DNA of 64,000 nucleotides, taken from Podarcis gaigeae. Taxonomy: Eukaryota. Positions within the stretch are counted from its first letter, which is position 1; each line of letters begins with the position of its first letter. The translations under genes were made by a program, and so were the position numbers. The notes beneath the pieces were generated by a model. The model was given only the letters and a program-made list of their open reading frames with translations, searched no databases and was not told the DNA's origin. Shown piece after piece: positions 2,595-41,934 of the stretch. The DNA is taken from NCBI GenBank assembly GCA_964106915.2, contig OZ066918.1, one strand, 5' to 3'.

Positions 2595-5141
2595 TAGTCT
2601 AGAAATTAAAATACTCATATTGCCATGCATTACAGCTGAATACTAGAATAAATCTTCCTAGTCTGTTTGGAAATTATAATCTAGGCATTTTCTGATGAGC
2701 TTGTTGGCAAAGGGAAAATGGCTGATGCTGACCAGTAAAGCCCAAACAAGTAAGGAAGTAGTCACACTTTGGCTGTTTGGATATCTGAATCTGTGGTGTG
2801 TATAGCAGAGATTGGGCATAATTCAGGCATATACAAACTATTCCTAAACTCTGAATTAAGTACTTTTGGAGTCCCTAAAGCAATTTAGAACTTTGATAGA
2901 GGAAGCTGACTTAAATTTGGTTTTAAATAAACATGGCTGGATACCAGAATAAGATGGTAGCTTATTCCCACTTCTGGTGGGAGTGTCATAGGAGTACTGG
3001 GCATAATAAATTTGCCTTATTACAAAGCAAATAATTATGTCCCTCCATGACCTCTGCTGAATTTGTTTATTGATCAGAATGTAGAATTGGTAAGGCTTTT
3101 ACTTTTAGTAAGGAATTGGTCGCCCGTTTACATTTATCAGCTGAAAGAATCACAGCCAGGGTACTGGAAATATTCTGATGTGAATCGAGAATCCTGGTGC
3201 CAAAAATTATGGTGGACAATACTGCTAGAAAAATGTGCCCCCAAAATAAAAATATTGAGAGACCAACATACATGATGCTCTTTGGGTGGTGTGTGGTGGG
3301 ACTTGTGATTTCATTAATGTGAGGTAGTGTGGCAGCTTCGTTGCTTATGTGTGGCTATGGATCCAATGATACAGGACTAGACTGTGTTTCTGCTTTGGTC
3401 CTCACCTTGCTGAAAGTTCAGCAAAGAGAACATTGGAAAGAGAGAAAGTGTTATAAGTGAAATAATGTCCCCTGCGGATGAATTGGTTTGATAGCACTCA
3501 CCTTATGAAATTTTGGGCACCATGTCCATTAGATGATGATAAATGTTGTGCTATTTATGTGAAAATTATTTCATGCAATCTTTCTGATGAGTGTGTGTAT
3601 TTATTTTCCTGTCATGAAATCTAGTCATGTGAACTTGCTCAGACTGGTAAGATGGCAGAGCTTAGTTTTGGAAACTGTTTTGATAACCCAGTTGATAAAT
3701 GGTATAGACATCCAATCTTGTAGTCATGCATTTGTCTTAATGCTTTTTTAAAGAACACTTTAAAAATTAGAAGTGTGGACAATATTTCATTGTGTAACAG
3801 CACCATCTTTAATTTCTGGTAAGAGCTATTTGTTGTCAATAAAGAGCAAGTCGATTTCAAGGCATGTCCCATCTCTAGTTTATCTATAGTTAGCAGGGGG
3901 AAATGTGTGTGTGTAAGGGGGGGGGGAATGTCATTTGAAATGAGTGAGATATATTAAGGGGAGCATAATGTGTTCTGTTTCCAATCAACACACAAGTGTA
4001 TATTAGTTGCATAATGAGGAAGTCTATACAAATCTCTTGGTTTCTGTTCCTTCATTGTTGAAACAATACTGCTGCTGTTTCCTTTTTCTTTCTTTCTTAT
4101 TTAATGCATAGTTCAAGATTACCAGTAGGCAAAAACTGCTTTTTTAAAATTTCATTGTAACCAAATCCTTTCCAAATGTTCTTCATCAGACCAGATGACT
4201 GGCATAAAGAAAAGCTAGTAGACAGCAGTTAGTTACCCTGCATAATCAAAGCAAAAATTGCCACTGAAAATACCCCTTTGTGCTGAAAAATGAAACCCCT
4301 TTTCCTCCAAATTATGCACGAATTATAGGATGCAGATAAACTGGGGAAAGCACTACAGATTTAATCGAAGGGCTTAAATGGGGGGAAATGTTCCCAGAGA
4401 ACTTTGTGTTCTTATTTTACTGTCTTGCATACATGGCTTCTAAGTCATCAGGAGGGAGGGAGGGAGTTTGCCTGCTCAGCACACTGTTTTTGTAAGCTAA
4501 TGAGGGCAAAGCGTGAGCCATAGGCAATGATGCTGCGATATTAGCTGTGACAGGGAGCTTGATCATAATTATCTTAACGAGGATAGGGTTAATTACAGTG
4601 GAAACTTAAAGTTCTTTCTGTTGGAATCAGGCAGAGCTGAATGCGTTGTGATGTTTTGTCATTTTGATGTGACTTTTGAAATTGCATTGGAAATCTCTTG
4701 GCAACGATTGCTTTCCTCCAGGAGTGGGAGTGTGAGGCCTGCAATGAGGTAACCGAGGTGGTACCTGTAGGTGAGATAATGGGCAGCTTTCATGTCATTA
4801 GAGCAGGGGCAGATCAACCTGCAGTGCACTTGAGTGATGCTTATTAGCCTTCTAAACCAACTAGGGAGGACGGCTACCTGCCACTACCCCTTAAGCCCTT
4901 GGTGGTGGTCATGGTACTGAGCCTGTGCCTTGTTGCTTTTAATTCACAAAGACAGATAGAAGGTTCTTTGCTACAAACTAAGAGAGCTTACAGGCTTTCC
5001 TTGCTGCTCTTTGAGTTTTGCAGAGTTTTAATAAAAGGGATATTCCAAGAGCAGAAGCAGCCTATTCCTAATATCTAGTAAAAACATTGATGCTAATCCC
5101 TTCTGCTTGAATAGCACTTCTCTGTTGAAGCTCCTAAAGTA

Positions 5142-5379
5142 CTCTACAGACACAACTTTACAATCTGCTGGGTGCAGTGCTGTAGGCAGCTTGATCTCTG
5201 TTCAGTAACTGGGAAACTGAGGTCCATGGAAACTTTATGCATTGCCAAGGATCTCTCAGGACAATCCTGAAAACTGGATGCTTCTAACCTAGCAATGATA
5301 ACGAGCCATTATTCATTTCTTCCTCGCACTCCACGCCCACATATTGGAGGTCATAACTGAGGATGGCAAAGACGGTTGT
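5142..5379 (+). repeat. Non-SINE arm of inverted duplication, copy A (partner 21635-21872)
   Basis: Reverse complement of 21635-21872, with about 5 mismatches in 238 nt by eye. The first ~160 nt are identical. Confidence 0.92.
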
Positions 5380-5691
5380 CCGATCAGAAGGTTGGCGGTT
5401 CGAATCCCCGCAATGGGGTGAGCTCCTATTGTTCGGTCCCTGCTCCTGCCAACCTAGCAGTTCGAAAGCACGTCAAAGTGCAAGTAGATAAATAGGTACT
5501 GCTCTGGTGGGAAGGTAAACAGCATTTCCATGCGCTGCTCTGGTTCGCCAGAAGTGGCTTAGTCATGCTGGCCACATTACCCAGAAGTGTCTGCGGACAA
5601 ACGCTGGCTCCCATGGCCAGTAAAGTGAGATGAGCGCCACAACCCCAGAGTTGTCTGCAACTGGACTTAATAGTCAGGGGTTCCTTTACCT
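5380..5691 (+). mobile_element. Sauria SINE (Squam1), 5'-truncated
   Basis: ccgatcagaaggttggcggttcgaatccc B-box region, conserved body, (ACCTTT)-type tail. Confidence 0.9.
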
Positions 5692-5707
5692 TTTACATAT
5701 TACATGT

Positions 5708-6097
5708 GAGATGTGGGTGGCACTGTGGTCTAAACCACTGAACCTTGGGCTTGCTGATCAAAGGGTCAGCGGTTCAAATCCCTGTGATGGGGTGAGCTCC
5801 CATTGCTCAGTCCCAGCTCCTGCCAACCTAGCAGTTCGAAAGCATGCCAAAAAATGCAAGTAGATTAATAGGTACCGCTCCGGCACAAAGGTAAACACCG
5901 TTTCCATGTGCTGCTCTGCTGTTGGTGTTCCGCTGCATCAGAAGCAGCTTAGTCATGCTGACCACATGACCCGGAAAAACTGTCTGTGGAACGGACAAAG
6001 ACTAGCTCCCTCGGCCTGTAAAGCGAGATGAGAGCCGCAACCCCAGAGTCATTCACAACTGGACTTAACTGTCAGGGGTCCCTTTACTACAAACTAC
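5708..6097 (+). mobile_element. Sauria SINE (Squam1), near full length
   Basis: tRNA-like head gggtggcactgtggtctaaacc, body and tail. 16-bp direct repeat TTTACATATTACATGT at 5692-5707 and 6098-6113 (TSD). Confidence 0.9.
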
Positions 6098-6120
6098 TTT
6101 ACATATTACATGTAACATGG

Positions 6121-6535
6121 GACAAGGGCTGTAGCTCAGCAGCAGAGCATGTCTCACATGCAGAAGGTCCCAGGTTCAGTACAGTGGTACCTCGGGTTAA
6201 GTACTTAATTTATTCTGGAGGTCCGTTCTTAACCTGAAACTGTTCTTAACCTGAAGCACCACTTGAGCTAATGGGGCCCCCTGCTGCTGCTGTGCCGCCG
6301 GAGCACGATTTCTGTTCTCATCTTGAAGCAAAGTTCTTAACCTGAAGCACTATTTCTGGGTTAGTGAAGTCTGTAACCTGAAGCGTATGTAACCCGAGGT
6401 ACCACTGTACTTGGCTTTCCAGACAGGATTGGGAATGTCCCATGTCCGAAACTCTGGAGAACCACAACCAACGAGGGTAGACAATACTGACCTATATGGA
6501 CCACTGGTCTGGCTCAGTATAAGGTGGCTTCCTAA
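6121..6535 (+). mobile_element. Squam3-like tRNA-derived SINE interrupted by a TcMar MITE
   Basis: Head gggctgtagctcag..gcagaaggtcccaggttca. The 3' part gtagacaatactga..atggacca.tggtctggctcagtataaggtggcttcct resumes after 6409. Confidence 0.75.
6182..6407 (+). mobile_element. Tigger/TcMar-like MITE
   Basis: TIR CAGTGGTACCTCGGGTTA / TAACCCGAGGTACCACTG with TA TSD. Five related copies in the window. Confidence 0.9.
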
Positions 6536-8092
6536 GCAGCTCAGATCTCTAAATATTTATGCTTGAACTGACAATTCGGGGCAGGGTGATTGGGATCAGA
6601 GAGGCATGAAGGTAGGTGAGAATGGAGCAGGTTTATTATTGCACTCCTTATTCTCACTTGTAGCCTCTCCACCCCTGCCATATGCTCTGAAAAATGGAGC
6701 TGATTAAATGGTGAAGGTGGGCAGTGCACAAAGGCTTCCTTGAAAACTGCAGGAATGAATGAACACTTTTAAAAAAAGCAAAAAAGAGAGCTATGTTGGA
6801 TATGGACTGGACACTGTGTGCACAATGCCCCTGCTGATGACGTGGTAAGGAAAATAAACAAACAAGACCTTGTGTAACTAGAGACAGATCCAAGGAACTG
6901 CTGGTGCGCATATTGTTGAAGGAGAGGGTAGCCATTGCTCCTTCACTCCAGCATGCCTTTCTGCAGCCTGAGATCACTTTGTAACCTCGTTAAGTCTGCA
7001 TAGTGCCCTCTCTGTTCCATCTTGAGACTGTTAGGAAACTGCAGGCTGTGGCTTTTTCTCCTCTCCTACAACACCCTCTTGCAAACTCCAAAGTTTGCTT
7101 GCTACTCTCTGGCTATGCGTTGGCCCTAATGAAAGGTATGGCGCTTCTGTGTAGTGTGATTCCTTAAAACAAAAGGAAAGGAAAATTCCCTGTGAGAGTG
7201 ACTAATGACATTACACGGCAAAAATGATCAAGCCCTAGCCAGGTGTGGAGGAGGGCTTTGCACACAATCTTCTCTGTTCCTGCCTAAAGCTTAGGCGGGC
7301 ATTGTGCCCTAGCCTCTGTTTTGGAAATAAAGGGGCTACCTCAATAGGCAACTCTCTATCTCTCTCGCTCCTTTGTCCCACTTCATGGCATGTCATTTTG
7401 TTTTATGCCTCCCCTCCAGCAGTTTTGGATGTGTGCTTTATTCTTCTTGCCAGTTGCCAACCATTTGCAGATTCTCATGATAAGGGTATTATATTTGCAT
7501 AACACAACTCATGAACAATGTGCATTTGGAGGCTGACACAGACCAGAGCCCCAGCAATGCATACTCACAAAGGGCCTATTAGCGTCCCATAAGGCTCTGT
7601 GGTGTTGACAGGGTGGTGGCCTTTTTTGAACTCCCTTTGGCAAGCGGAAAGACTTTTTTTTCTTTTTAAAGCAATAAACTGAAGATTGGACATAATCCAC
7701 TACTAACTATTTATACGGAGAGAGCATTTAAATGGGCACTGCCAGTTAGGCTTTATTATGAATCTAAAGTTAACAATCATAACCACACAATCTGTTTATT
7801 GCTTCTTCTCCTGTGCGGCTTATAGAGGAGCGTGAGGTCAGGATCATTTAGAGCAGCAGTTTCTCCTGCCCCATGGACCATTTGAGGGACTTAACATTTG
7901 GGGAAGGTTTTTTTGGGGGGGAGGGGGGATGCCGTGACACTGGAGCACAAACAGATTCATTTCCCCCACAATCTGATACGGCAGCATTCAGTTACGTTCT
8001 TTCCATTGCTTTTTATTTCCTTTCAGAATGGATTGGCGGGGGCGCCAGAAATTGCAGCTTAATGAATGTTCCAGCAAAACCGGTAGAAAGTG

Positions 8093-8318
8093 CAATGGTA
8101 CCTCAGGTTACATACGCTTCAGGTTACAGGCTCTGCTAACCCAGAAATATTACCTCAGGTTAAGAACTTTGCTTCAGGATAAGAACAGAAATCGTGCAGT
8201 GGCGGCGCAGCAGCAGCAGGAGGCCCCATTAGCTAAAGTGGTGCTTCAGGTTAAGAACAGTTTCAGGTTAAGAACAGACCTCCAGAACGAATTAAGTTCT
8301 TAACCCGAGGTACCACTG
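8093..8318 (-). mobile_element. Tigger/TcMar-like MITE (opposite orientation to 6182-6407)
   Basis: Same TIRs (left end slightly mutated). Interior is the reverse complement of the 6182 copy. Confidence 0.88.
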
Positions 8319-8883
8319 TATAGCACTCAACTCCCTTTTCGTCCAAGCACGTTGCGCCCACTTGCAACCTTTTTCAGTTTTTCAAGCAGGCTGGTATGAG
8401 CTCCTTTCTCACCCAGCAGATGAGCTCAGTATTAATAAATAAATAAAAGGCTGATAAATGTATTCGGAATGTGCCTACTGCATGGATCAATCAGTAGAAA
8501 CAGGTGCACTTGCATTGTTCGGGCCGCCTGAAACAATGGCCAGGCTGTGCTCAGGTGAGGAGCAAATGGAGATGGGGGTCTGTGGCAAAAGGGAACAGTC
8601 CGTGTAATGCTACCACACATGTGACAAACCCCCCACCCCCCAAATGCAGTAGTGAGCTTCCGTACCAGCAGTTACTGCAGATATATAACAGGTTGTTCTT
8701 TATTATTAGATTTTTCTACGCTAAAGGGAAATCTGGGTTAAATGGGGCAGAAGGATGGTGACGATATAATGTGAGTGGTGCAAAAAATAAAATAAAAACG
8801 TGTGCATGAGTAGCTGCGGTTCCACAATAAACTCCCATCTGAAAGCACCCTTTGTAATTCACATCAGTTTTGAACCTCCAGAG

Positions 8884-9008
8884 TAAGGTTACCAGATGTC
8901 CCCGTTTCCTGGTGACAGTCCCCAAATTTACAAATCAGTCCCCATACAAAATCTATTGAAGTTGAAAACTGTCCCCGGATTCATTGGAAAAAAAATCTGG
9001 TAACCTTA
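8884..9008. mobile_element. Short MITE, hAT-Blackjack-like termini
   Basis: Perfect 14-bp TIR TAAGGTTACCAGAT / ATCTGGTAACCTTA and internal tgtcccc motifs. Confidence 0.7.
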
Positions 9009-10513
9009 GAGTAGAGGACTATTGAGAAGCATGGAGTTTCTCTGGTTATTTATAGTTAACACTGTGGTGTCCTTGAACCGTAGCATGAAGGTCACATGTT
9101 TTCTTTCCTACAAAGGACTTTTCATTCCATTCTTTTATTACGGGGCTATAAGTTTCAGCTAAGACAATTTCATCTAACCTACCCCTGCCAGGTTTAAATT
9201 TTTGAATTGGGTGGATAAATATTTGTTATTTCCCCCCACAGCATGCCTGTTATATGCCTGCAATAGAGCATATCTCATGCAGACCTTGAAGAAGGGTGTT
9301 AAAGAGGGAGGGAATAATTCCCTTTAGTATAAATGTCATTGGACAGTGAATAAATAGTGTAGACTTGCATCTCCCTTATTCATCACATTTTATAAAATAG
9401 TGAGGAGATAAAGTGATGATCCTCACCACTGGTAGGCATACTAGCTCAGCTGTCAAGTCATGCAACCTCAGCATATCTCTAGGTGTCTGGTAGGTGAATG
9501 AGCTGTGAATGTGTGTGTCTTTGTGTATGCTCCATATACCATGCCCATCTTAGGTGATTAATGTGAAGATTCCCCCACCCATTTCTGTAAGAACTTGCAA
9601 AGCTACGAAATTAAGAGTTAAAACTGAAACAGTGGCCCAGCAAAGTGACAAAGCCAGACTTTTAAATTCCTTCCTCCTAGCTTTCCTAATTGGCTACCAA
9701 ATTTCTACAAATGTCTATGTGTTTACAACCCAAAGAGCTGTGCTTCCATGCTGAAAAGATTTTGCTTGTTACTTTTAAATCTCAGTGTTTTGTGCGTGTC
9801 TGTGTGTTTTGTGGGCAGGCATTGCTGGGGGGGGGGCGTGGGCCATCGTAAAAAATAATAATTTTTGCTGTATCTGGGCGATATAGGGCACTCTAGCATT
9901 TTATCTTTTGTGCTTGAAAAAACAGCCACCACAACGAAAAACTCCAGACAGAGAAAATTCTGTGGTTAATAAAATAAAAATCACTAAAGGAAAAGGAAAA
10001 ACTTCCCATCATACCCCCCCCTCCTGCAGTTTTATATATAGGGTAGCTGCTGAGAACAATTCTTGAAGTTGTATTTATTATTGTTAGTGGGGTATGATAT
10101 TTCATGGCAGAAATGATGGATGACAACTTAAATTTGTGTCCAGGGAATGAAGGTGAACTGTGACAGAGTTATTTATCTTGGGAATGGAGGTTAGGGTCAG
10201 GCGAGGCTGGGTGCCTGAAGGCACAAGACATTGACAAATTCATCCTGCAGGCCTCATATCTGAAGCCTTTTGTTTTGGATCCTGGCTACTCACTAAGTGA
10301 CCCCCATCCTTCATTCTGCCAGCTTGCGAAGAAGGATGTGTTGCTGTACCGACACTCCTCTTGCCACTAATTCTTGTCATTCAGTCTCCTGACAGGACTA
10401 AAGCAAAACTCTTCCCGCTCCTTGAAAGGGAAGGTTAAAATATTTATTTCAGCTCATAATGGCCTCCCTGATTTACTGGAGTATCATTTTTCCTGTTGCC
10501 TTTGTCGTTGCAG

Positions 10514-10640
10514 GTCACTGGAAGGACTGGAGACATTTAGCGGCTTGGAAGAGCTGATCTTGGACAACAATCTCCTCCGGAATGACCTCCGGTTACCCAG
10601 GTTACCACACCTCCATACCCTGATGCTGAACAAGAACCAA
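10514..10640 (+). CDS. LRMDA: LRMDA internal coding exon (127 nt; probably exon 3 of the long isoform), leucine-rich repeats
   Basis: Pyrimidine tract and CAG acceptor at 10511-10513. Encodes (R)[42 protein letters not shown], matching human [47 protein letters not shown] as I recall it. Followed by U12 donor ATATCCTT. Confidence 0.95.
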
Positions 10641-11741
10641 ATATCCTTCCAAAAGAGAGGGTGGGGAGGGGAGAGGAGAAAGGCCCTGCCAAATGTCGAA
10701 TAATCCTTATGTGTCAGCCAAATTAAAGTATGTAAAATGTCACTCGTTTGCAGACAAAGCATCCTCTCCCTTTCTCTTGTCACTCAGGATACTTCAAAGT
10801 AATTTATTACAGGTCATTCATAAACGAAATGCCTCGCTATATCTTCCTGTTGCTCCGTTTTTTAGTGCGAGCCCTAAGTTTATGGCTCTGAAGGAATCTT
10901 TGTCAATAGATTGAGAGGTGGAAATAGCAGCCAGTTTTGCGCTTCTTAACAGAACCCAGCCTGCTTGGGTTCTGTGGCAGGCTGACCTCTAGTGGAATAG
11001 TGTGTGCAGTGAAACAAGATTAAAACATTAGGTTGGCTTTTTTTCACATGCACATAGAATGCTTCTTAAAGAAAATATACATCTTGTTTAATTTGGCAGA
11101 AGCAATCACTTGACGGGAGCCGATAGGGCCATGTTAGCCATTAGGCTAGAAAGGGTCAAGAATAGTTTCCCACCCTTTGCTGTTTTGTGAATAACACTGA
11201 TCGCCAGAGTGTAGCAGTGTGGTTGTTACTTCCTGTGCTGGGCTCTTTTAAAATATTGAGCCACCCTGAGAGTGGCAGCTGTTCGCTTATCGCACAAACA
11301 GCATTGTTGCTCGGTATTATTGGAAATGCTGGTAGTCTGCACTGCAGGACAGGCAGCAAAGCCATGCAAAGTTGCATGCTGAGACTGAGCTGAAAATATC
11401 AGTTCAGTTTTAACTTAATTTTCATTGTTTTCAAAAGATCTTTCTCTGTGTTTTGTCCAACTCTGGGATGCAAAGAGGGTGGGGGCAAAGATGCGTGTTA
11501 GCAGCTCTCTTCTCAGCCAAGTCTAATACTTTGCCCAAGTAATCAGCCACCATACCCAGGAAGCCTGGACATTTTATAGGCTTTAAAAGAATGGGCTTGG
11601 AAGCCTTTGAGTGGCCTGTCGCTAGTAAGGATTGATTGGCAAATTTTTAAGCAGAGAATGACGATCCTTAGGCAAGTTGAAGGTCTTAATGACAGTTAAG
11701 CTCCGGTAAATTAATCAAGTATTTTACACATACACTCTCAG

Positions 11742-11869
11742 GTAGCCTTCACAAACCTGTTACTTGCCAGATGTTTTGGACTACATCTCCCATCAGCCTC
11801 TGTGTTGGCTGGGACTGATGGGAGTTTGCTGGGCAAAGCATGTGGAGAGTGGCAGGTTGGTGAAGCTAC
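11742..11869. mobile_element. Short palindromic MITE (gactac..ctcccatca family)
   Basis: Fold-back structure. Related copies at 28184-28320, 47043-47149 and ~63531-63655. Confidence 0.7.
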
Positions 11870-12621
11870 TCTGGTGTTGCTGATTTGTCAACATACTCAT
11901 AATAGTAAGTAGAACACAAAGTAATTATTTAGAGCTGCAGAGTGTTCAAAACACTCACATATATGTGGAACACCCCATAAGATACTGCTATTCTAGTATT
12001 AAAGATGTTGAAATGAGGGATAGCAAATTAATGGCTATGGCAATATTTGAACGAGGGGGTCCCAATCTCACATTTTATGCCACTACAGTACACACACGGG
12101 GTCCAGGATAGAGAAAATGTGTACCCAAACAGGGCCCCATATTTTGAGCTCCATCTTTCTATGCCATACGCAAAATGGCACTTGAGGTTTCCACATTGCT
12201 TGCTATGCGGCTGGCAGCAAGTGTTTAGAGGAATGTTCCCCACAATCCTCTGTGGTGGCACAAGTGATCCTGGGATGATGCATCATAATTCAGAGATAAG
12301 TAGACCAGAAACAGCAGCTAAGAGACTTGGCACGCCCTATTTCCAGTATGGTGAGTGCCCCATAAGAAATGAACTGTGGGTTGGGTGGTTAAAGGTGGTT
12401 AATTGTGGGCAAAGTACTTAGTTTTTGGCCTCAATTCAAAAGGCTGGTTATGACCTATAAAGCTTTATGTGGCTCAGGACCTCAAGGACTGCCTCTACCT
12501 ACATGCACTGACCTGGACCATGTGACCATTATCTGAGGCCCTATTTCATACAGGAGTTTTGGAGGGTAGCAACATAAGAATTGGCCTTGTGGAATGCTAA
12601 CCTCCCCGGGGGGGGGGGGGG

Positions 12622-12960
12622 GAGCCTCTTGGGCTTGCCGATCAGAAAGTCGGCAGTTCGAATCTACATGAAGGGGTGAGCTCCCATTGTTCATTCCCAG
12701 CTCCTGCCAACCTAGCAGTTGGAAGCATGTCAGAGTGCAAGTAGATATATAGGTACCACTCTAGCGGGAAGGTAAATGGTGTTTCTGTGCACTGCTCTGG
12801 TTTTGCCAGAAGCAGCTTAGCCCATGCTGGCCACATGACCCGGAAAAACTGTCTGCGGACAAACGCCGGCTCCTTCAGCCAGTAAAGCGAGATGAGCACC
12901 GCAACCCCAGAGTCGTTCGCAACTGGACTTAACTGTCAGGGGTCCTTTACCTTTACCTTT
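12622..12960 (+). mobile_element. Sauria SINE (Squam1), slightly 5'-truncated, apparently within an old L2-like 3' fragment
   Basis: SINE body with cctttacctttaccttt tail, preceded by a poly-G run. Confidence 0.88.
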
Positions 12961-14641
12961 TTTAATTTGAATGGTGGCATTGTGGCCTCTCTTATTTTGG
13001 TGGGATCAATGTTTTATCTGTATAACTGTGCTTTAAAGTTTTTGTTGTTGTTTGGTTTTAATGTCTTCAACATCACCACCACTCTTGCAACGGGCTCCCT
13101 CTTTCTCCCCATAGTCTGTCTTCACACCCTCTAAGCACCAATTTGCTCTTGTATTAGTGGGTATGAATTGAGAAGCAGCAGAGGGAAGGGGTGACTTAAC
13201 CCTTTCTCCATGGACTGTTTGCCCACTAAAGATCATCCTCCCCACTCTGCTTTTCTCTCTGTGGTTGAAAAGATGTGGGCCAGCATCTTTTCCCCTCTTA
13301 GTGGACTGAACAACTATCCTGGGAAGGTCAATTGTTGACAGAACAATGGGCCATGGGGGGAAGGATTAAGTCTAATGCTGTTCTGACTAAATCTGGAGCA
13401 CTGTGGCGGAACTAAAATGGAAAAACTGAGCTGTTCATATGCTTCATTCATCCTGCTGCATGTTTTGCCCAGTATCTGAAAAATGAGGGTGGGGGTGGAA
13501 TCCTACCACAAGCATTATGCTGTATATGATAAGTCTCCCATTTGCTTGTTGGCTGCTGCAAATAAGATGCAAATTGGAGTGCATGTAGTGAAGGGAAGGT
13601 CTTAAAGGGCAAAAGTTCTGTTTCTATCCTGTGGTGATACCCTTGCCCTTCAGTTATTGAGGTGAAGAAATGGGGTACATTCCATCTGCAAGAGATAACA
13701 AAGATAACAGGAAAACATAAATCAATGCTGGGGACAAGCAACATAAAAGAACCAAGCATTTAAGATAGCCACATAATAATTGTTGCACACAACTCCAGGC
13801 ATGGGAGAGTAAAAGAGTGAATTGTTCGTTTAAACCAGTAATTTGTTCCATTGTTTATTTATTGATACATGCAATTTATAGGCTGCCCTTTAGCTGAAGT
13901 TCTTTGGGCTGCTTACAGGCATTAAAACAAGCAAAATTATAATAAAGTAGTAAAATACAGCTAATGCAGGATCGCCATAAACTGACAAGAATTGGTTTAA
14001 AAGAGAAAACAGAGAAAATGAGAATTTGCAGCACTAAATCAATTAGAACAAAGGGCAGAGAAACAAAGAGTAAGAAGCAGACCAGCTTGAATGTGCCCTT
14101 CAACCTTTGCCAATTGGCATGAGGTATTAGCACACCTTGCCTCCTCATGATGCTGATCCCCATTTGTGAGCCTTCGTTATGGGATTTCTCAGGCTAGTTT
14201 TATGCCAGTTTTTTTTTTTAAAACCTGACATGTTACTAGTGCTATTCATGTCACGTGCACCACCAGTGTGGCAATGTTTGGGTGGGAAAGGCTTTGAGCC
14301 TGCACAACCAGTTTGGCATCCTTTTCCCCATACCTTTCTTCCATGCACCATCTTTGATTTTTATGGTGGATCTGTGGGAACCAAGATTTCCCTGTTTTCA
14401 CTTGCCTTCCAAATTCTAGATGCAAAGCAGGGCTCTTAAGGAACTGAACAAGGAGTGCCAAATGTTTCTTCTTAAAGGGGTTGGGGGGGGGGGCTTTGAA
14501 GTATTTACGTTAGCACCCATAACACAGTGCCAGATTTAGGAAAGTTCTCAAGCCTTTGGAAACTGTGCACTAAACACTCTTGTCAAATATGTACATTTTG
14601 ACACAAAAGCCCAAACTTTGGAAAAGTCCAGCTCTGGTTGC

Positions 14642-14792
14642 NNNNNNNNNNNNNNNNNNNNNNNNNNNNNNNNNNNNNNNNNNNNNNNNNNNNNNNNNNN
14701 NNNNNNNNNNNNNNNNNNNNNNNNNNNNNNNNNNNNNNNNNNNNNNNNNNNNNNNNNNNNNNNNNNNNNNNNNNNNNNNNNNNNNNNNNNNN
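14642..14792. other. Assembly gap
   Basis: Run of N. Confidence 0.99.
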
Positions 14793-15465
14793 TACAAATC
14801 CTTTATAGCCTGTTTTGGGAGTTGTGTGTATGTTTGTAGTGGATGCATTAAATCAACTTCAATGTAAGATATCTAAGATTTCATGTGGTCACTCTACCAC
14901 TTTAATGGCAGGTTTCACTGTTTCCTTCCACCCTGAAGTTGTGTGTGTTATAAACTGTGGAGCAGGAATACCAACACGTTCCTGGTAACATTTGATCAAG
15001 CATTTATGCCTATGTACCAATTGGATTGGATTGATCTTTATTACGGCCATTGGCCCGTTACAGTACCAATTAATGCCGCAGTGCCACCAAAAGCACTTTT
15101 ATTCTTTCTGGTGCATTTGGGCTGCTGTCATTTAACTCCATTTTAAATCTCATTTTTCCTAGGGACTGTAATACATTTAGTGATGAATGTACTGTGAAAG
15201 TAACTGCTGCTTGTTGCCATGTTGGAAAAGTTTCATGGCTTTAGCAATCACTAACCATTTCCCCATCCGACATCCATCATTTTGTCAAAGTTTTTAATGT
15301 GTTGCAGAGAGTCATCTAGAAAAGAAGAAAAGAGGAGGAAAAAATAATGAAGGAGGGGGACCCAAGACCTTTCATTTTATGCCAAAAAATGACTTGGATG
15401 TAGTCCCCTTTCCGCTAGCAACAATTAATGTTACATTTTTACGCATATAATATGGGGTGTGTGGG

Positions 15466-15491
15466 GTGTGTGTGTGTGTGTGTGTGTGTGT
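15466..15491 (+). repeat. (GT)n microsatellite
   Basis: About 13 GT units, ~40 nt upstream of the U12 branch site. Confidence 0.95.
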
Positions 15492-15553
15492 AAATGGAGT
15501 TATTTAACAGTCTTCCTTTTGTTACTGAATCCTTAACCCATAATCTTGAGTAC

Positions 15554-15693
15554 ATAACAGAACTGGAAAGCCTGCTGGATCATCTGGTTGAAGTAGTGCC
15601 TTCCTTGGAGTACCTAAGTTTGCTTGGAAATACAGCATGTCCAAATGAACTGGTCTGCAAAGACAAGGATGAGGGAGACTATCAGAGGTACAG
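15554..15693 (+). CDS. LRMDA: LRMDA internal coding exon (140 nt; probably exon 4)
   Basis: Preceded by U12 branch site TCCTTAAC (15530-15537) and AC acceptor (15552-15553). Encodes [46 protein letters not shown](R), compare human [43 protein letters not shown]. Donor CAG|GTTAGT. Confidence 0.95.
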
Positions 15694-16181
15694 GTTAGTA
15701 TCTAGGATTATACATGCATTATTTTCAAATGTAAAATATTTAGTATTGCATGCAGCTAACCTCTGCTCCGAGTAGTAGACCCACTGAAATTAATGGATCA
15801 AGGTTGTCACAGTCATCTACAGTAAGCCTACAACTTGTGCACATTCAGCTTTACAGTACATGCGTGGCAAAATAAAAAATAAAAAGAGGGTGGACTTTCA
15901 GGAAAAATGACAGCGGTAATCCCACCCATCATTGAACCCAGTGAGCTTTGTTTATACACAATTTTGGCTTTAGGTGCAATCCATGGAATGTTATTCCCAT
16001 GTAAGTTATGGGCCTGCTGTCCTTTGTTTGGTCTACTCTGAGTAAAAATTAGATGATTACAACCTTCAACCAACTTTAAATGGCTGTTGAAGTAAAATCT
16101 AAGAGCTGTGTATAGGATCTAATGTAATCTAAGGGCAATGTGTGAAAAGGTTACAGAATCATCCTGTTCCTGTCTCTATTC

Positions 16182-16418
16182 CATGGGTAGGCAAGCTAAG
16201 GCCTGGAGGCCGGATCCGGCCCAATCGCCTTCCAAATCCGGCCCACGGATGGTCCAGGAATCATGAGTAGAATGTGTCCTTTTATTTAAAATGCACCTCT
16301 GGATTATTTGTGGGCCATAGATATTTGTTCATTCCCCACCAAAAAATATAGTCTGGCCCCCCACAAGGTCTGAGGTCCAGTGGACTGACCCACTGCTGAA
16401 ACAGTTTGCTGACCCTTG
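16182..16418 (+). mobile_element. hAT-type MITE
   Basis: Termini CATGGGTAGGCAAGCT...AGTTTGCTGACCCTTG. Degenerate 8-bp TSD CTCTATTC/ATTTATTC. Homologous to 62004-62255. Confidence 0.85.
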
Positions 16419-19019
16419 ATTTATTCACTACAGAGGCCCTTTTATGTGGCAAGGTGAGGTGACCAGTTGAAGTTTGTGGGAGCAATTTTGGGTCACCAGG
16501 CCTCCTGAAGCCCAGAGCATGGGAGCCATAGAGTAAAACCTGGTGGGATATGGACAGAGCCTTGTGCCTAGTGGGAGCAGAAGATGCCACCTGGTGTGTC
16601 ACAATAGAGGGGCTACAGGGATAGAGTATGAAGGACCTAGGTGGGGGGAATGGCAAAACCTCTGAAACCAAGCATAAAAAACCCTGCATACCCCTTATTT
16701 CTCACACCTCACCCTCATAATTTAGTCCTTTCCATGGAGGCGTTGGTAAGGAAGCTTAAGCCTCTGAAATCCCAGGTCACCACACTGAGACCCAGGAAAA
16801 CACGAGCTATTAATGATGGCAGAATGAGACCTAGGCAGATCTGAACCAGCTGAACAATCCACTGGAAAGTTCTCTGGCACAGATGTTATTGAAAAAGATT
16901 CAGTGATATGAATATTTGGCCTCATACAGGACCCAGCAAATTGCAGCAGCAATTCCTGATATGGAATTGCGTGTTCCTATAATTGGTGAGTTCTTGTAAT
17001 TCCTATTGTGTTACAAGCCCATCAGCAAGCCCATACATTTCTATATAGGTGATCACATGGGTGCCACCAAAGCATCAGCAATCAACTGTTTAATTTTGAT
17101 CTGGTAACATCTACAGCAACTTAACCAGATCATGAAATTATGTGTTTCCCCACTCCACATAATTGGCTGTCATTGTCAAGGAAACACACAACACTATAAC
17201 TGCAGGACCCCAGAAAGTGGCCCCAGACGTCAGGGGCTCTCAGAACTTCATTTCAAAGACAGACATGCGTTCAGTGTTAACATGTATTTCTTGCAACAGG
17301 TGATGTAAGATGCAAGGTAGTGCTTCATGATTCAGTCACTGAGTGATGAGCCTTGTATTTTAGATAGGATGGCAAAATTCAAACAAACTGCATGGCATTT
17401 TCTACATAAGCATTCCACATAACCATGTTGCTCTCAAGTTAAACCTACCTACCTATTTCCAGCCTATCAGACAAGCCTTCTGAAATGATGTGTGAGCAAA
17501 CATTGACTGTACAGTTCATAAACTTAGAACTGTATGTTCATGCTTTCAGCATAAAAAAGTGTTAGAAACCTGGAAGGCGGCTTATCCAGAAGAGACATAA
17601 CATGGAGTCCATGAGATGGTTCGCTGTGGTTTTTAGCAGTGCTGCAGTAATCTGAACAGGCCTCCCAACCTGATCTGTAGTGGCTATTTCAAGTTGAGTG
17701 CTTCAGTCTCTTTCGAAAATAGATTCCGAACTGTCTTTAGTCTAGATACTTCTAATGTGCCAACTTCTGAATTGTACATAAATGTGCCACCTTGGCTTTT
17801 GCTAAGTGGTCTAGTTTGAATAAAATATTTTCCCATCGCCTTAACCCCAAACTGGAAGGCACGCTGGCTGTCCTGCGTACAAAGAGCCTAATAGTGGTGT
17901 TGCCATGTAAATTTATGAGACATTTTCACCACAGAATTGCTTAAAAATGAATGATATCGCTACAGTTTACTGTTTTTCACTTTAAGTACATTTTTCTGAC
18001 AATATGCCTCCTATTAATCATTTAAGCAAAAGTAGTTCCTTAAAGGAGCTATTCAGAGGCAAGAATCCATGGTTCATTTAATGCTGTCTGGGGGGAAAAA
18101 GTTGTTGAGTGACATTCTCTGTGGTTATGTGATGTAATATTTATAATATGTCACACAGCTATACATCAAAACAATCATGGCTGTTGTTGAATTTCCATGC
18201 AAAATGTTGATTTTTTTTTTAAAGGGTCAAGATAGTTTTAGCTCATATTAAGGCAAACCATCATGCCAAAGCCGGGAGGAGAATCTTACTTTGAAAAGGT
18301 TAATTAAAATAGGTTTTAAAGTGAATATTATTCCAATTTGCATCATATTACTGCAGTGGAAGTGAAGTGAATCTCTCTTATCACTTTCTTTTCTCCTGTA
18401 GAACTAGCATTGAATGTTCTTCATTATTGCAGATGCAGTATTAGTTTCCCCATAAGATATATATTGCACCTGCCATAAAAATAACAAGATTTAAAGACCA
18501 AAGATGAAACTAATGAAAACAGGTTCTATAATATGTGACTAAGGGGCAATTCATTGAACCTACCTTTTCACACACTTATCTCAAAAGCTCTTATCTGTCC
18601 TTTCCAAGCGCCCCTAGAGAAATAGGGACAGAGAGTCAGGCCCCCTCCTTCCCACCCAAACCTGTGAAACCTGTAGGATGTGGTGTCAACTATTGGCATT
18701 AAGGTATTATTTCTACAATCATTGCTTCTATAAGCACAGCTGCCAGATTGAGAAGCTCCCATATTTCACTGCTTTGAACTGGACCACATTTTGGCCCATA
18801 CTAAAGTGTACACAGGTTAATGTTTAATCCAGTCACCTTCATATATTCCTAAGCAAGCTGCAGAAACACAATAATATATTTATTTCACAGTAAAAAAAGA
18901 GAGGGAGTGAATTATTAAGGTGGAATTAAGAGGCTATTCATCTGTAATAGTGCTGCTTGCTGAATAGGAAGCAGGACTTACTTCTTTTGAGTAAAGGTTT
19001 TGGAAAGACCTTGGTTGTG

Positions 19020-19418
19020 NNNNNNNNNNNNNNNNNNNNNNNNNNNNNNNNNNNNNNNNNNNNNNNNNNNNNNNNNNNNNNNNNNNNNNNNNNNNNNNNN
19101 NNNNNNNNNNNNNNNNNNNNNNNNNNNNNNNNNNNNNNNNNNNNNNNNNNNNNNNNNNNNNNNNNNNNNNNNNNNNNNNNNNNNNNNNNNNNNNNNNNNN
19201 NNNNNNNNNNNNNNNNNNNNNNNNNNNNNNNNNNNNNNNNNNNNNNNNNNNNNNNNNNNNNNNNNNNNNNNNNNNNNNNNNNNNNNNNNNNNNNNNNNNN
19301 NNNNNNNNNNNNNNNNNNNNNNNNNNNNNNNNNNNNNNNNNNNNNNNNNNNNNNNNNNNNNNNNNNNNNNNNNNNNNNNNNNNNNNNNNNNNNNNNNNNN
19401 NNNNNNNNNNNNNNNNNN
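19020..19418. other. Assembly gap
   Basis: Run of N. Confidence 0.99.
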
Positions 19419-21324
19419 CCACAGTTTTAATTCCACATTCAGCCACTTGCAAAAAAAAAAAAAAAGCAGTGCCACAGCAGTGCTGAAGTCCCTCAGCATG
19501 GAAGCAACCTGAGTGTTAACTGAGCAGCAATAATCACTTTTCTCTTCACATGTGAATCTTTGTTTCTAGCAGCCGTCTGAGCCACATGGCATTGGCAAGT
19601 AAACTTTACAACACTTTACATAAACTTAAAGGGCTTTTTAGTGTTTTGCCCCAAGGTGGCAGAAAAAGAAATTCAAAATGTTTTCGTGCTAAATACACCA
19701 ATACCCCAGTAAAATTATATCCTAGCCATTCCTGTACTTTTTTAGTTCTCTCCTGTCCCTGCAAAATAAGCATTATATATAGTGAAAAAGTTGTCTAAAT
19801 CTTGTTGCGCACGTTAAAAAAACCCACATATCTCAGACTTAAAATTTTTTGAATGAAATCTAGGAACAAAACAAAAATGTCAAACAAGAATGGATCATAC
19901 TGTATTGTGTGTTTGTGTGTGTATATAAATATAAATAACATTATTTTTCAAACTTTCTCCCATTGTACTCAAGGCAATTTGCAATATAAATTAACGGCTT
20001 ACAGTCTAAGAGGCACATTACAAATGGAAAGTGGTTCACGGAGTAAAATATGATGCCTCTGTTAGAAATTAAATATGCATTTGGAAAGACAGCAACATAA
20101 CAGCTCTGGATTTTTGTGAAATTAATAAATATATCAGATTCAATTAATTTATTTTTTGCATGATTAATAATGCACATGAATTATTACTATTAATTATGAA
20201 TAATCAGTTATCGTTTCCTACCAAGTATCATTGTGTAGAAACGACTGCCTGCTTTTTTCGGTTTTAAAACTTTATTCATAATCAAAACATAGTGTGAGGT
20301 GATATGCCAGTAGAGAAACATTCCAGTATTGAGAAAAAGTAATGTAACTAGCAAAGCAGCATAAATGGGAAATAACCTCAGCTGCAGTCTCTGCTTTGAA
20401 GATCTCCAGAAAGCACAGGCCATGAGCTAGAGATCAAAGTCACAGGGAGTCAACACAATAATTGCTGGTTACTTGTCTTGTACCAGCAGCACTTGTTCTG
20501 TCTTGGGGGTCTATTGTTTGCAGTAAAAACACGAACCATGCTATTATTGGATTGTGAAAAATTGTCCTGGTCAGAATATATTGAAGTTTAAATATAGGTG
20601 GCCTTATTTGTCTTTTAATCAGTAAGATACAAAGTGCCCAAAGCCCAAACACAGTTTTAGAGTTTGTTGTCCCCTTGAAAACCCAGATATGCATGGAGTC
20701 CACCCAATGCTTTATTCAGTTCTCTTCTGTCCTGCTTTTTCTGGGCTGCTCTGACTTCTTCCTGTTACATTAATAGTCATTGCTTCTTTCCCTATGTAAT
20801 TCCCCCACGCACCCACCCACACATACACAATTGCAGTGTAGCCTAAATTCAAACATTTAGTCCATATACCTGATGGCAATCATATAGAGAGGGGTGGGGT
20901 GGGGGCTCATTTAACACTTAATTTTAATATAAACATTTTATATTAAATGAACAACATGAGCCAAATTTAGACAACATGAGAAGTGAGATACTTCGGCTGG
21001 TTTTGTCTGCAACATGGCAGCAGGAGGAGCTGGGGAAGGAGCACCACAGGAACTCTGAGGAGGACACACATTAAACCACAGCTTGATTTAAACTGTGGTT
21101 TAATGAGAAATGCAAAGCAGATCACCAGGGAAGCGGGGATCCAAGTAACCCAGGTCCAGGCACCTGGGTACACTGTGACAGCTGGGGCCCCAGACTCCTA
21201 GCTTTTATATTTTTTATTTATTCTTTTTTTAAAAAAAGTGAGTCAGTTGGACATTTCTGCAGGAAGAGAACAAAATGTGGAGGCAGCTCTAATGCTTCAG
21301 CCCTTGTCAGGTAGCACTGTTGTT

Positions 21325-21634
21325 AAGGGTAAGGTAAAGGGACCCCTGAGCGTTAGGCCCAGTCGCGGACGACTGTGGTGTTGCGGCGCTCATGTCGTTT
21401 TATTGGCCGAGGGAGCCGGCGTACAGCTTCCGGGTCATGTGGCCAGCACGGCTAAGCCGCTTCTGGCGAACCAGAGCAGCGCACGGAAACGCCGTTTACC
21501 TTCCCACCAGAGTGGTACCTATTTATCTACTTGCACTTTGACGTGCTTTCGAACTAGGTTGGCAGGAGCAATAGGGACCGAACAATAGGAGCTCACCCCA
21601 TTGCAGGGATTCGAACCGCCGACCTTCTGATCGG
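21325..21634 (-). mobile_element. Sauria SINE (Squam1), 5'-truncated at the same base as 5380-5691
   Basis: Reverse-complement SINE from the aaggtaaagggacccctga tail to gaccttctgatcgg. Confidence 0.9.
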
Positions 21635-21872
21635 ACAACAGTCTTTGCCATCCTCAGTTCTGACCTCCAATATGTGGGTGTGGAGTGCGAGGAAGAAGTG
21701 AATAATGGCTCATTATCATTGCTAGGTTAGAAGCATCCAGTTTTCAGGATTGTCCTGAGAGATCCTTGGCAATGCATAAAGTTTCCATGGACCTCAGTTT
21801 CCCAGTTACTGAACAGAGATCAAGCTGCCTACAGCACTGCACCCAGCAGATTGTAAAGTTGTGTCTGTAGAG
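21635..21872 (-). repeat. Non-SINE arm of inverted duplication, copy B (partner 5142-5379)
   Basis: About 98% identical reverse complement of 5142-5379. Confidence 0.92.
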
Positions 21873-22027
21873 AATGAGCACTTTCCTCATGCCCATATTA
21901 TTACATTCCCCCCCCCCCCCGTGTGCTGTTTTTACAGAATAAAACACAACTTTCAGACTTGGTTATGTTTTACTCAGAAGTACTCTATTAGAAGTACTCT
22001 CTTCCTAGTGAGAGAAAAAAATGGTGA

Positions 22028-24279: not shown

Positions 24280-25345
24280 AACTCCTGCTGTGGTCTAAAA
24301 GTCTTCTGAAAACAGTTGGTCTTTAGCTGTCACCTGAAGAGTGGGACAGTAAGATCTGAACCGAGAGAGAGCTACATAGATGTGGTGCTGCCTTGCTTTT
24401 TGTAGTGCGGACCCTCCCCCGCCCCAGATCATATTCAATGAGAGTACCACAAGCAGAACTTCCCTCACAGATCTCAAAACTCGGGTTGGCTGGTAATGGA
24501 AAAGATGCTGCTTCAAGTATAGATAAAGGTAAAGGGACCCCTGACCATTAGGTCCAGTCATGACCAACTCTGGGGTTGCGGTGTTCATCTCGCTTTATTG
24601 GCCGAGGGAGCTGGTGTACAGCTTCCGGGTCATGTGGCCAGCATGACTAAGCCACTTCTGGCGAACCAGAGCAGTGCACGGAAATGCCGTTTACCTTCCC
24701 GCCGGAGCGGTACCTATTTATCTACTTGCACTTGTGCTTTCGAACTGCTAGGTTGGCAGGAGCAGGGGCCGAGCAACGGGAGCTCACCCCGTTGCGGGGA
24801 TTCAAACCACCGACCTTCTGATCAGCAAGTCCTAGGCTCTGTGGTTTAACCCACAGTGCCACCCACGTCCCACTTCAAGTATACTTGGGTCCTAAACCAT
24901 TCAGGATTCTGTATGCTAGTGTAACACATCATGAAGTGCAGTCTTCAAGAGTAGTTCCACACAGAACACAATCCAGCCAGGACATTATTTGAGCATGGAC
25001 TACTGTAGCCAGGTTATCAAGGTAGAGGAATGGACAAAGCTGGGCACTGCTTGCCACTGAGGCTGCATGGGCCTTCAATGACAGAGTGAAATCTAGAAAT
25101 ACCCCACAACTGTGCACCTATCCCTTAGGGGAAGTGCTACCCTGTGTAGAACAGGCTGCCTACCTACTTCTCGGACCTAAGAACTACCTATTGCCAGAAC
25201 CTCCATCTTGCCAGGATTCAGCTTGAGTTTATTCGCTTTCATCCTGCTGAACACTGCTCCCAGGCACTGGTCCTATACTTGCACAGCCTGTCCTAATGCA
25301 GATGGTTTAATGTGAAAGTGCTTGGTGGCATAAGGCAGGCCCTTA
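24280..25345 (-). mobile_element. Degenerate L2-like LINE fragment interrupted by a Sauria SINE
   Basis: Minus-strand translation GVFLDFTLSL.AH...LCPFL...LATVVHA..MSWLDC resembles the L2 RT C-terminal region. Confidence 0.7.
24522..24872 (-). mobile_element. Sauria SINE (Squam1), full length
   Basis: Complete head to tail. 11-bp TSD CTTCAAGTATA (24511-24521, 24873-24883). Confidence 0.93.
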
Positions 25346-33090: not shown

Positions 33091-33217
33091 GTATTTTGTT
33101 CTGCACAAATTAACCAACTTGAAGTTTCTGGATTCTCGGAAAGTCGGCAGAAGTGAACGTGAGGAAGCCATTTTGAGGGGTGCTTTTATGAAAGTGGTGA
33201 AGCCTGTGGATGCAAAG
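33091..33217 (+). CDS. LRMDA: LRMDA internal coding exon (127 nt; probably exon 5), LRR-cap region
   Basis: Acceptor ttgtttttaaaacag|G and donor AAG|GTAAGT. Phase-compatible with the previous exon. Encodes (R)[42 protein letters not shown], compare human [39 protein letters not shown]. Absent from the ORF track. Confidence 0.93.
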
Positions 33218-39427: not shown

Positions 39428-39594
39428 NNNNNNNNNNNNNNNNNNNNNNNNNNNNNNNNNNNNNNNNNNNNNNNNNNNNNNNNNNNNNNNNNNNNNNNNN
39501 NNNNNNNNNNNNNNNNNNNNNNNNNNNNNNNNNNNNNNNNNNNNNNNNNNNNNNNNNNNNNNNNNNNNNNNNNNNNNNNNNNNNNNNNNNNNNN
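39428..39594. other. Assembly gap
   Basis: Run of N. Confidence 0.99.
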
Positions 39595-41718: not shown

Positions 41719-41934
41719 TACCAGGGTTGCGCCAGCATTTCAAGAGCCCTTACGCTGCCTTCTCAAAATCAGGCAGGCTTTGGGAAGGTGGCAGGGAAGG
41801 TGTTCCTAGTACATGGGCAAATATGGGGCACAGAAGGGGCCCAGAGCAAGGCCTGGATGGCTTAAAGTGGTTCTGTGTATTGTGTAAAAAATACATAAGT
41901 ATCTCTCTCCTTACCTGGGCATCCTAACTCATGA

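What the first reader, a model, noticed from the sequence alone, without database searches (positions are those of the whole stretch)
5142..21872. Near-identical inverted duplication brackets a frame-symmetric two-exon LRMDA module: candidate circRNA with an endless LRR reading frame
Seen: 5142-5691 and 21325-21872 are reverse complements. Their 238-nt non-SINE arms are ~98% identical (~160 nt perfect) and continue into ~310 nt of SINE. They sit in the introns on either side of exons 10514-10640 and 15554-15693. These exons total 267 nt (89 codons) with phase-2 boundaries at both ends. Back-splicing 15693 to 10514 rebuilds AG|G (Arg), giving ..DYQRY-R-SLEGLE.. with no in-frame stop and one in-frame ATG (10623). 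Established: inverted intronic complements promote back-splicing and exon skipping. Inference: the pre-mRNA could form a ~550-bp stem yielding (a) a 267-nt circle capable in principle of rolling-circle translation of tandem LRR units, and (b) an in-frame skipped mRNA lacking most LRRs. A U12 intron lies inside the loop.
Basis: partly seen in the sequence, partly recalled or inferred. Interest (0 to 1): 0.8.

Follow-up and report, generated by a model that had tools for sequence, protein, structure and literature searches.

The report
Inverted intron copy around LRMDA exons
In a lizard-like genome, a 300-base piece of one LRMDA intron has been copied backwards into a later intron next to a SINE, so the two LRR exons between them could be looped out as a circular RNA, but this layout is common and no RNA data could be read to show that it happens.

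Summary
Blocks 5142-5441 and 21573-21872 are 98% reverse-complementary (160 nt perfect). Exons 10514-10640 and 15554-15693 are LRMDA LRR exons totalling 267 nt. They have phase-2 outer borders, an AT-AC U12 intron between them, no in-frame stop and one ATG (10623).

Only those 300 nt are a true duplication. The remaining ~250 nt of each arm is ordinary SINE complementarity from two different subfamilies. Python aligns straight through the left breakpoint, so the left copy is ancestral and the right one is a young chimeric insertion.

The gaps lie in introns. Contig order and orientation agree with Python and with exon 33091-33217.

The arms could form about 516 bp of RNA duplex (net -665 kcal/mol). 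Four plain SINE pairs also bracket the exons at -224 to -326 kcal/mol, and Python has its own bracketing pair.

A stop-free circular frame follows for any 3n coding block; 14% of human circRNAs have one. First-stage notes on this genome list at least eight similar candidates.

I read this as a real, probably neutral structural variant and an ordinary circRNA candidate.

The parts
4321..5222 (+). Block conserved with Python bivittatus (79.6% over 911 nt; core 4500-4790 is 96% identical). It runs through the left breakpoint at 5142.
4651..4748 (+). Candidate upstream first coding exon: ATG at 4651, phase-2 donor AG|GTAAC. Its N-terminus MFCHFDVT is shared with whale and bird LRMDA gene models. 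Coding status is uncertain because Python has a 2-nt deletion inside it.
5142..5441 (+). Left (ancestral) copy of the truly duplicated 300-nt block: about 204 nt of intron plus the first ~95 nt of the resident SINE.
5346..5694 (+). Left SINE, older (11 CpG), of the subfamily with the GTCTGCGGACAA insert. Candidate target-site duplication ACATATT at 5339-5345 and 5695-5701.
10514..10640 (+). LRMDA LRR exon A (127 nt). It starts with the third base of a split Arg codon and ends on a codon boundary at an AT-AC donor.
10641..15553 (+). U12-type AT-AC intron (ATATCCTT donor, TCCTTAAC branch site, AC acceptor), conserved in Python. Contains gap 14642-14792 and a + strand SINE at 12638-12952.
15554..15693 (+). 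LRMDA exon B (140 nt). It ends ..TAC AG|GTTAGT, phase 2.
21573..21872 (-). Right (derived) inverted copy of 5142-5441: 7 substitutions, none in the outer 160 nt.
21325..21572 (-). 3' two-thirds of a younger SINE of another subfamily (the whole R SINE body has 24 CpG; TGT form of the indel), fused to the copied block within SINE homology.
33091..33217 (+). Next LRMDA exon (127 nt, AG|G acceptor, gtaagt donor). It fixes the orientation of the contig that holds the right arm and is the in-frame landing exon if A+B are skipped.
5716..6087 (+). Second + strand SINE in the upstream intron. It can also pair with the downstream - strand SINEs.
24527..24863 (-). Second - strand SINE in the downstream intron. 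It is an alternative partner for the upstream and internal + strand SINEs.
6180..8320 (.). MITE-like inverted pair (6180-6412 / 8088-8320, 91%) within the upstream intron. This is within-intron pairing, net -255 kcal/mol.

Best explanation
This is a real, lineage-specific structural variant inside the squamate LRMDA gene.

Ancestral state (shown). The intron upstream of LRR exon A carried a sense-oriented SINE just downstream of a deeply conserved block.

The event (shown in outcome, inferred in mechanism). A 300-nt stretch, about 204 nt of that intron plus the first ~95 nt of its SINE, was later copied in inverted orientation into the intron downstream of exon B. There it is fused, within SINE homology, to the 3' part of a younger SINE of a different subfamily. 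I infer one homology-guided template switch. The more likely route is a reverse transcriptase copying a SINE RNA at the new site that jumped onto the SINE embedded in the LRMDA pre-mRNA. The alternative is DNA repair that used the upstream SINE as template.

Consequence (computed). The primary transcript can fold a stem of about 516 bp that encloses exons A and B and their AT-AC intron.

What the stem most likely does (inferred). It would behave like any intronic inverted repeat. It would modestly favour back-splicing of 15693 to 10514, giving a 267-nt two-exon circle, or in-frame skipping of both exons, and it would be an ADAR substrate. Single-exon circles are disfavoured because each would have to join a U2-type site to a U12-type site.

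Nothing points to selection for this outcome, so I take the variant as probably neutral. Any circle is most likely a low-abundance by-product that is not translated.
For: - The repeat and the exon arithmetic are confirmed.
- The gene is LRMDA. Exon B gave 94 hits below 1e-10, and the top hits are named LRMDA in Hemicordylus, Python and Cyanoderma, or C10orf11 homolog in Columba.
- Python aligns with the left copy on both sides of 5142 and not with the right copy's flank, so the direction of copying was left to right.
- L-R identity is 96.5% in SINE segment 5385-5441, against 86% or less to other copies. Beyond 5441 L-R is no closer than unrelated copies. The 10-nt subfamily indel differs. R has 24 CpG against 11 in L.
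- The arms differ at 7 sites, have unique outer flanks, and lie 1.9 kb and 9 kb from the nearest gaps.
- Duplex energies were computed for the arms and for competing pairs.
- The AT-AC intron is conserved in Python.
- Joint skipping of both exons flanking a minor intron is the usual alternative splicing event there (PMC8034651).
Against: - There is no RNA evidence of any kind, so the stem may have no measurable effect.
- The arms lie 4.8 kb and 5.6 kb from the splice sites.
- An internal + strand SINE (12638-12952) can compete for the right arm at -287 kcal/mol.
- The origin mechanism is not settled. The candidate target-site duplication around the right insertion (AGTGCT) is reached by 51 of 500 shuffles.
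- No DNA reads were laid, so the assembly of both copies is judged from internal evidence only.
Confidence: 0.65

Rival explanations
1. The stem drives efficient production of a 267-nt circLRMDA. This circle is translated from ATG 10623 by rolling-circle translation into tandem LRR concatemers that have a biological role.
For: A 3n stop-free frame with one in-frame ATG. A strong cross-intron stem. Rolling-circle translation of endogenous circRNAs exists (PMC9242994). A human circLRMDA of unknown exon content is listed in PMC13399211.
Against: No RNA or peptide evidence. The ATG has a weak context (C at -3, C at +4). No IRES or m6A evidence. Rolling-circle products are reported to be largely degraded by the proteasome. 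The frame property is expected for about one third of coding-exon blocks. None of 152 LRMDA-like proteins in the database shows exon A sequence after exon B (an insensitive test).
Confidence: 0.03
2. The main effect of the stem is on the linear mRNA or on editing. It loops out exons A+B and raises in-frame skipping, giving an LRMDA isoform without most LRRs, and/or it acts as an A-to-I hyper-editing site. Circles are negligible.
For: Skipping is in frame, because both exon A and exon 33091-33217 start with G after a phase-2 intron. Joint skipping of the exons around a minor intron is the commonest alternative event there (PMC8034651). The 300-bp, 98% duplex is a good ADAR substrate by general knowledge. 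Intron flanks of exon A and exon B are strongly conserved with Python, 82-87%, which is typical of regulated exons.
Against: No transcript evidence. The conserved intron flanks predate the duplication, so they say nothing about its effect.
Confidence: 0.15
3. Assembly artefact. One arm is a misplaced or mis-oriented copy, for example haplotype sequence or a wrong path through SINE repeats in a gapped short-read scaffold.
For: The scaffold has four estimated-size gaps. The arms end inside a high-copy SINE. No reads were laid.
Against: The copies differ at 7 of 300 positions, 4 of them at CpG sites. Both have unique flanks on the outer side. An artefact would need two chimeric junctions, and the one at 5142/21872 has no repeat to cause it. 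The arms are not next to gaps. Contig order and orientation agree with Python and with the gene's exons.
Confidence: 0.05
4. Rival on origin. The right copy arose at the DNA level. A break in a pre-existing full-length SINE at the right site was repaired by invading the upstream SINE. Synthesis ran on into the upstream flank and the end was then joined without homology. On this view there was no reverse-transcriptase template switch.
For: The inner breakpoint lies in SINE homology and the outer one has no homology. The two sites are only 16 kb apart in the same gene. No significant target-site duplication surrounds the whole right insertion.
Against: No remnant of a SINE head lies outside 21872. 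The donor SINE is in sense orientation in the pre-mRNA, as an RNA template switch requires. The chimera has the 5'-truncated-copy-plus-intact-tail layout typical of template-switch retrocopies.
Confidence: 0.3

Closest known systems
Exon circularization promoted by inverted intronic repeats (IRAlu pairs in primates; complementary-sequence model of Jeck 2013, Zhang 2014, Liang and Wilusz 2014; cited from general knowledge)
   Same: Reverse-complementary sequences in the two introns flanking a block of internal exons. U2-type GT and AG sites at the back-splice. Several alternative SINE partners compete with one another.
   Different: The best-matched part is not a transposon family match. It is a single-copy 300-nt intron segment duplicated within the gene. 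An AT-AC U12 intron lies inside the would-be circle. No back-splice evidence exists.
Mouse Sry circular transcript (long near-identical inverted duplications flanking the exon; general knowledge)
   Same: A locus-specific, near-identical inverted duplication, rather than a dispersed repeat, brackets the exon(s).
   Different: The Sry arms are tens of kb long and the circle is demonstrated. Here the identical part is 300 nt and the circle is hypothetical.
Endogenous circRNAs with rolling-circle ORFs (circPSAP, circPFAS, circABHD12; Fan et al. 2022, PMC9242994)
   Same: Circle length is a multiple of three, the host frame has no stop, and there is an in-frame start.
   Different: Those have junction peptides and reporter evidence. 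Here only the arithmetic is shown, and the class is common (14% of human circRNAs).
Chimeric retrocopies formed by reverse-transcriptase template switching during LINE-mediated retrotransposition (e.g. U6-L1 chimeras; general knowledge)
   Same: Two different templates are fused head to tail at a point of shared sequence. The 3' SINE tail is intact and the 5' end is abruptly truncated.
   Different: The second template would be an intron of the very gene that received the insertion. The target-site duplication is not significant, so membership is unproven.

Membership tests
LRMDA (C10orf11) orthologue | Exon translations match proteins named LRMDA across vertebrates, in collinear exon order. 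| tested here: met
   Exon B is 93% identical to Hemicordylus LRMDA X2, and 94 hits fall below 1e-10. Exons A, B and C were found in order on the + strand. Pfam gives only a weak LRR_4 hit.
U12-type AT-AC intron | ATATCCTT 5' splice site, TCCTTAAC-like branch site 10-20 nt from an AC 3' end, conserved in relatives. | tested here: met
   Donor at 10641. Branch site at 15531-15538, 16 nt before the AC at 15552-15553. Python has the same donor plus TCCTTAAT and AC|ATAACAG.
Inverted-repeat-driven exonic circRNA locus | Reverse-complementary match between the two flanking introns. | tested here: met
   300 nt at 98% plus SINE complement. Predicted 516 intermolecular bp, net -665 kcal/mol.
Inverted-repeat-driven exonic circRNA locus | Compatible splice sites for the back-splice (downstream U2 donor, upstream U2 acceptor). 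| tested here: met
   CAG|GTTAGT at 15693/15694 and TTGCAG|G at 10513/10514.
Inverted-repeat-driven exonic circRNA locus | Cross-intron pairing prevails over competing pairings. | tested here: inconclusive
   The arm pair is about twice as stable as any other. The internal SINE 12638-12952 can pair with the right arm (-287) and a within-intron MITE pair exists (-255).
Inverted-repeat-driven exonic circRNA locus | Back-splice junction reads, RNase R resistance. | not testable with these tools
Rolling-circle-translated circRNA (rcORF) | Length 3n, no stop in one frame, a start codon. | tested here: met
   267 nt, 0 stops in the host frame, ATG at 10623 in a weak context.
Rolling-circle-translated circRNA (rcORF) | Evidence of cap-independent translation (junction peptides, ribosome association). 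| not testable with these tools
   No data are available.
Template-switch chimeric retrocopy | Junction at shared sequence between two templates, donor in sense orientation, intact 3' tail. | tested here: met
   Breakpoint near 5441 inside the SINE. Different subfamily 3' halves. The left SINE is on the gene's strand.
Template-switch chimeric retrocopy | One target-site duplication flanking the whole chimera. | tested here: inconclusive
   Only AGTGCT (6 nt), reached by 51 of 500 shuffles.
Assembly artefact | Copies identical, or adjacent to gaps, or in conflict with an independent gene or synteny order. | tested here: not met
   7 differences. 1.9 kb and 9 kb from gaps. Collinear with Python and with the exon order.

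The most novel reading that the evidence does not exclude
The young intragenic inverted copy has created a species-specific circLRMDA made of exons A+B. The internal AT-AC intron forces the circle to contain exactly this 3n pair. The circle is translated round and round into LRR concatemers that affect melanocyte biology.
Probability: 0.03. Interest if true: 0.65.

Novelty: new member of a known kind. Interest (0 to 1): 0.25.

Why it matters
If the circle exists, this locus would be a clean natural experiment. The stem is young and lineage-specific, its donor and direction of copying are known, and close relatives may lack it. That would allow a test of how much one 300-bp complement adds to back-splicing or exon skipping on top of ordinary SINE pairs. 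It would also test whether a minor intron constrains which exons can circularize.

The origin may be of more interest than the circle. If a SINE insertion captured intron sequence of the same gene, that would be one way genomes generate non-transposon inverted repeats.

As it stands, this is an ordinary candidate among many in this genome.

Tried and rejected
- **RNA evidence.** The look-up of sequencing runs found no run on record as RNA. Nine small runs guessed to be RNA, from a related organism, hold 5-8% of the words.
- Two local BLAST runs in the sandbox still had the unmasked window as subject. From then on my local copy was masked there.
- **Joined sequences.** The spliced and back-spliced sequences were never sent to a search tool. 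Exons were searched separately by reference. Only a local stop/ATG count used the joined order.
- **Solved structures.** The Protein Data Bank search on both exons gave nothing useful.
- **Pfam.** Only a sub-threshold LRR_4 hit.
- **Hemicordylus locus.** The lookup failed.
- **Literature.** No paper links LRMDA to a minor intron. No lizard circRNA resource was found. One human circLRMDA is listed without exon content. I did not fetch or compare any human sequence.
- **Exon order in database proteins.** I searched the 152 database hits for exon A following exon B and found none.
- **Identity gradient.** I first read the gradient in identity (100%, then 95%, 92%, 80%) as a gene-conversion gradient and rejected that. 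The first 160 nt contain no CpG, and 4 of the 7 differences in the next 140 nt are at CpG sites. Beyond 5441 the sequences are simply different SINE copies.
- **Rfam.** Nothing at gathering threshold in 10479-40000.
Full report
**Observation**

The inverted repeat is real and far beyond chance.
- 5142-5441 and 21573-21872 are 300 nt at 98% complementarity. A second block, 5459-5587 / 21427-21555, is 129 nt at 92%.
- The non-SINE part, 5142-5350, has exactly one other copy in the 64-kb window, the inverted one, at 98.6% and E 4e-103.
- The outer 160 nt are identical. There are 5 mismatches in 5142-5379.

The exons are as described.
- 10514-10640 is 127 nt and 15554-15693 is 140 nt, together 267 nt.
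- The outer sites are U2-type: TTGCAG|G and CAG|GTTAGT.
- The intron between them is a textbook AT-AC U12 intron. It has AACCAA|ATATCCTT, a TCCTTAAC branch site 16 nt upstream of the acceptor, and GTAC|ATAACAG.
- The host frame of the closed unit has no stop and one ATG, at 10623.
- The joined sequence was used only for this local count and was not sent to any search tool.

**Gaps (tested first, as asked)**

The four N runs are 14642-14792, 19020-19418, 39428-39594 and 46366-46633. The first two lie in introns and touch neither exons nor arms.

They do split the region into three contigs, so I needed evidence on order and orientation. Two independent lines agree with the scaffold.
- The next LRMDA exon lies at 33091-33217 on the + strand of the contig that holds the right arm.
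- Conserved non-coding blocks are collinear and co-oriented with the Python bivittatus locus L001 on both sides of both gaps.

Intron lengths remain estimates.

**Gene identity**

Exon B (46 aa) gave 94 hits below 1e-10 among 1.84 billion representatives. The best is 93% identical. The top clusters are named leucine-rich melanocyte differentiation-associated protein in Hemicordylus and Python, and C10orf11 homolog in Columba. Pfam sees only a weak LRR_4, and no solved structure is related.

A candidate upstream exon lies 394 nt before the left arm. It runs from ATG 4651 to a phase-2 donor at 4748/4749, and its N-terminus MFCHFDVT is shared with whale and bird gene models. It sits inside a block that is 96% identical to Python. 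Python has a 2-nt deletion inside it, so its coding status is open. No exon homology was found between the left arm and exon A, or between exon B and the right arm.

**What the arms really are**

Alignment with six other SINE copies in the window and segment-wise identities show three zones.
- In 5385-5441 the arms are 96.5% alike, against 86% or less to any other copy.
- In 5442-5587 they are no closer to each other than to unrelated copies.
- In 5588-5690 they belong to different subfamilies. A 10-nt indel groups the left arm with 5716, 12598 and 50474. It groups the right arm with 24863, 49718 and 59089.

The right SINE keeps 24 CpG and the left only 11. The true duplication is therefore 300 nt, and the rest is family-level SINE complementarity.

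Python aligns with the left copy continuously across 5142, within the block 4321-5222 = L001 9802-10702, while the right copy's outer flank is unrelated. The left copy is therefore ancestral and the right one derived.

The left SINE has a candidate 7-nt target-site duplication, reached by 10 of 500 shuffles. The right insertion has only a 6-nt one, reached by 51 of 500.

I infer a single homology-guided template switch. The leading possibility is reverse transcription of a SINE RNA that jumped onto the sense-oriented SINE in the LRMDA pre-mRNA. The alternative is DNA repair templated by the upstream SINE. The evidence does not decide between them.

An assembly artefact is unlikely. The copies show 7 differences and have unique flanks. 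The outer junction has no repeat. The arms are not near gaps.

**Consequences for the RNA**

All of these are computed or inferred, none observed.

Co-folding the arms gives 516 intermolecular pairs and a net -665 kcal/mol. The 300-nt core alone gives -441.

The exons were already bracketed without the duplication.
- Two + strand SINEs lie upstream and two - strand SINEs downstream. They give four pairs of -224 to -326 kcal/mol.
- An internal + strand SINE can pair with the right arm at -287.
- A MITE pair folds within the upstream intron at -255.
- Python has its own 152-nt, 82% inverted pair around the same two exons.

One specific inference follows from the U12 intron. A circle of exon A alone, or of exon B alone, would need a U12-type site spliced to a U2-type site. 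Only the two-exon circle is compatible with the spliceosomes. Joint skipping of the two exons flanking a minor intron is the commonest alternative event around such introns (PMC8034651). Here it would be in frame.

**Why the endless frame is not special**

Any block of coding exons whose length is a multiple of three is stop-free in its own frame once closed. By simple probability, an 89-codon unit will usually contain a Met.

In human data 14% of circRNAs have host-frame rolling-circle ORFs, and their products tend to be degraded (PMC9242994). The ATG at 10623 has C at -3 and C at +4.

First-stage notes on the same genome list at least eight other candidates described as an inverted repeat bracketing a frame-symmetric exon block (unchecked AI notes, used only as context).

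**Expression**

No RNA run is on record for the stretch. After that I worked beside those places.

A human circLRMDA is listed in a myelodysplasia study, with coordinates only (PMC13399211). Its exon content is unknown to me, and I did not look at human sequence. None of the 152 database proteins shows exon A after exon B.

**Verdict**

The sequence observation is correct, and I have sharpened it to a 300-nt, left-to-right, chimeric copy. The circRNA and skipping reading is mechanistically reasonable but untested, and it rests on features that are common. My odds:
- About 35% that junction reads would be found in deep total RNA from an expressing tissue.
- About 3% that a translated circle matters biologically.

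This is a new member of a known kind, of low to moderate interest.

Noticed in passing
window 4500-4790 (block 4321-5222): About 290 nt are 96% identical between this lizard-like genome and Python bivittatus. The stretch includes the site where the Python gene model starts (here ATA instead of ATG, and no GT donor) and an ATG..AG|GTAAC exon-like unit. This could be an ultraconserved element, an alternative first exon, or a promoter.
   Followed up: partly
window 17890-18215; 659-1054; 9962-10420; 36592-37441: Further non-coding blocks are 85-90% identical to Python and collinear with it. The intron sequence flanking exon A on both sides, and that upstream of exon B, is also conserved.
   Followed up: no
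window 6178-6412, 8088-8320, 41481-41721, 58179-58324, 62459-62699: A MITE-like family of about 233 nt with 22-nt terminal inverted repeats (6178-6199 / 6390-6411), present in five copies in the window.
   Followed up: no
window 5346-5379: The left SINE and its copy have a 5' head unlike the GGTGGCGCTGTGGGTTAAACC head of the other six copies. Even so, the candidate target-site duplication implies a full-length element. This could be a variant head or an earlier chimera.
   Followed up: partly
window 21907-21925 and 12608-12622: Poly-G runs lie next to the right arm's outer flank and directly 5' of the internal SINE. Their origin is unknown.
   Followed up: no
protein P0048: An LRMDA-like 321-aa database protein has internal tandem repeats of the exon-B end and of a later segment. 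This is probably a gene-model or assembly artefact in another species.
   Followed up: no
They lie in the conserved intron stretch just upstream of exon A. I left them out of all later searches.
   Followed up: no
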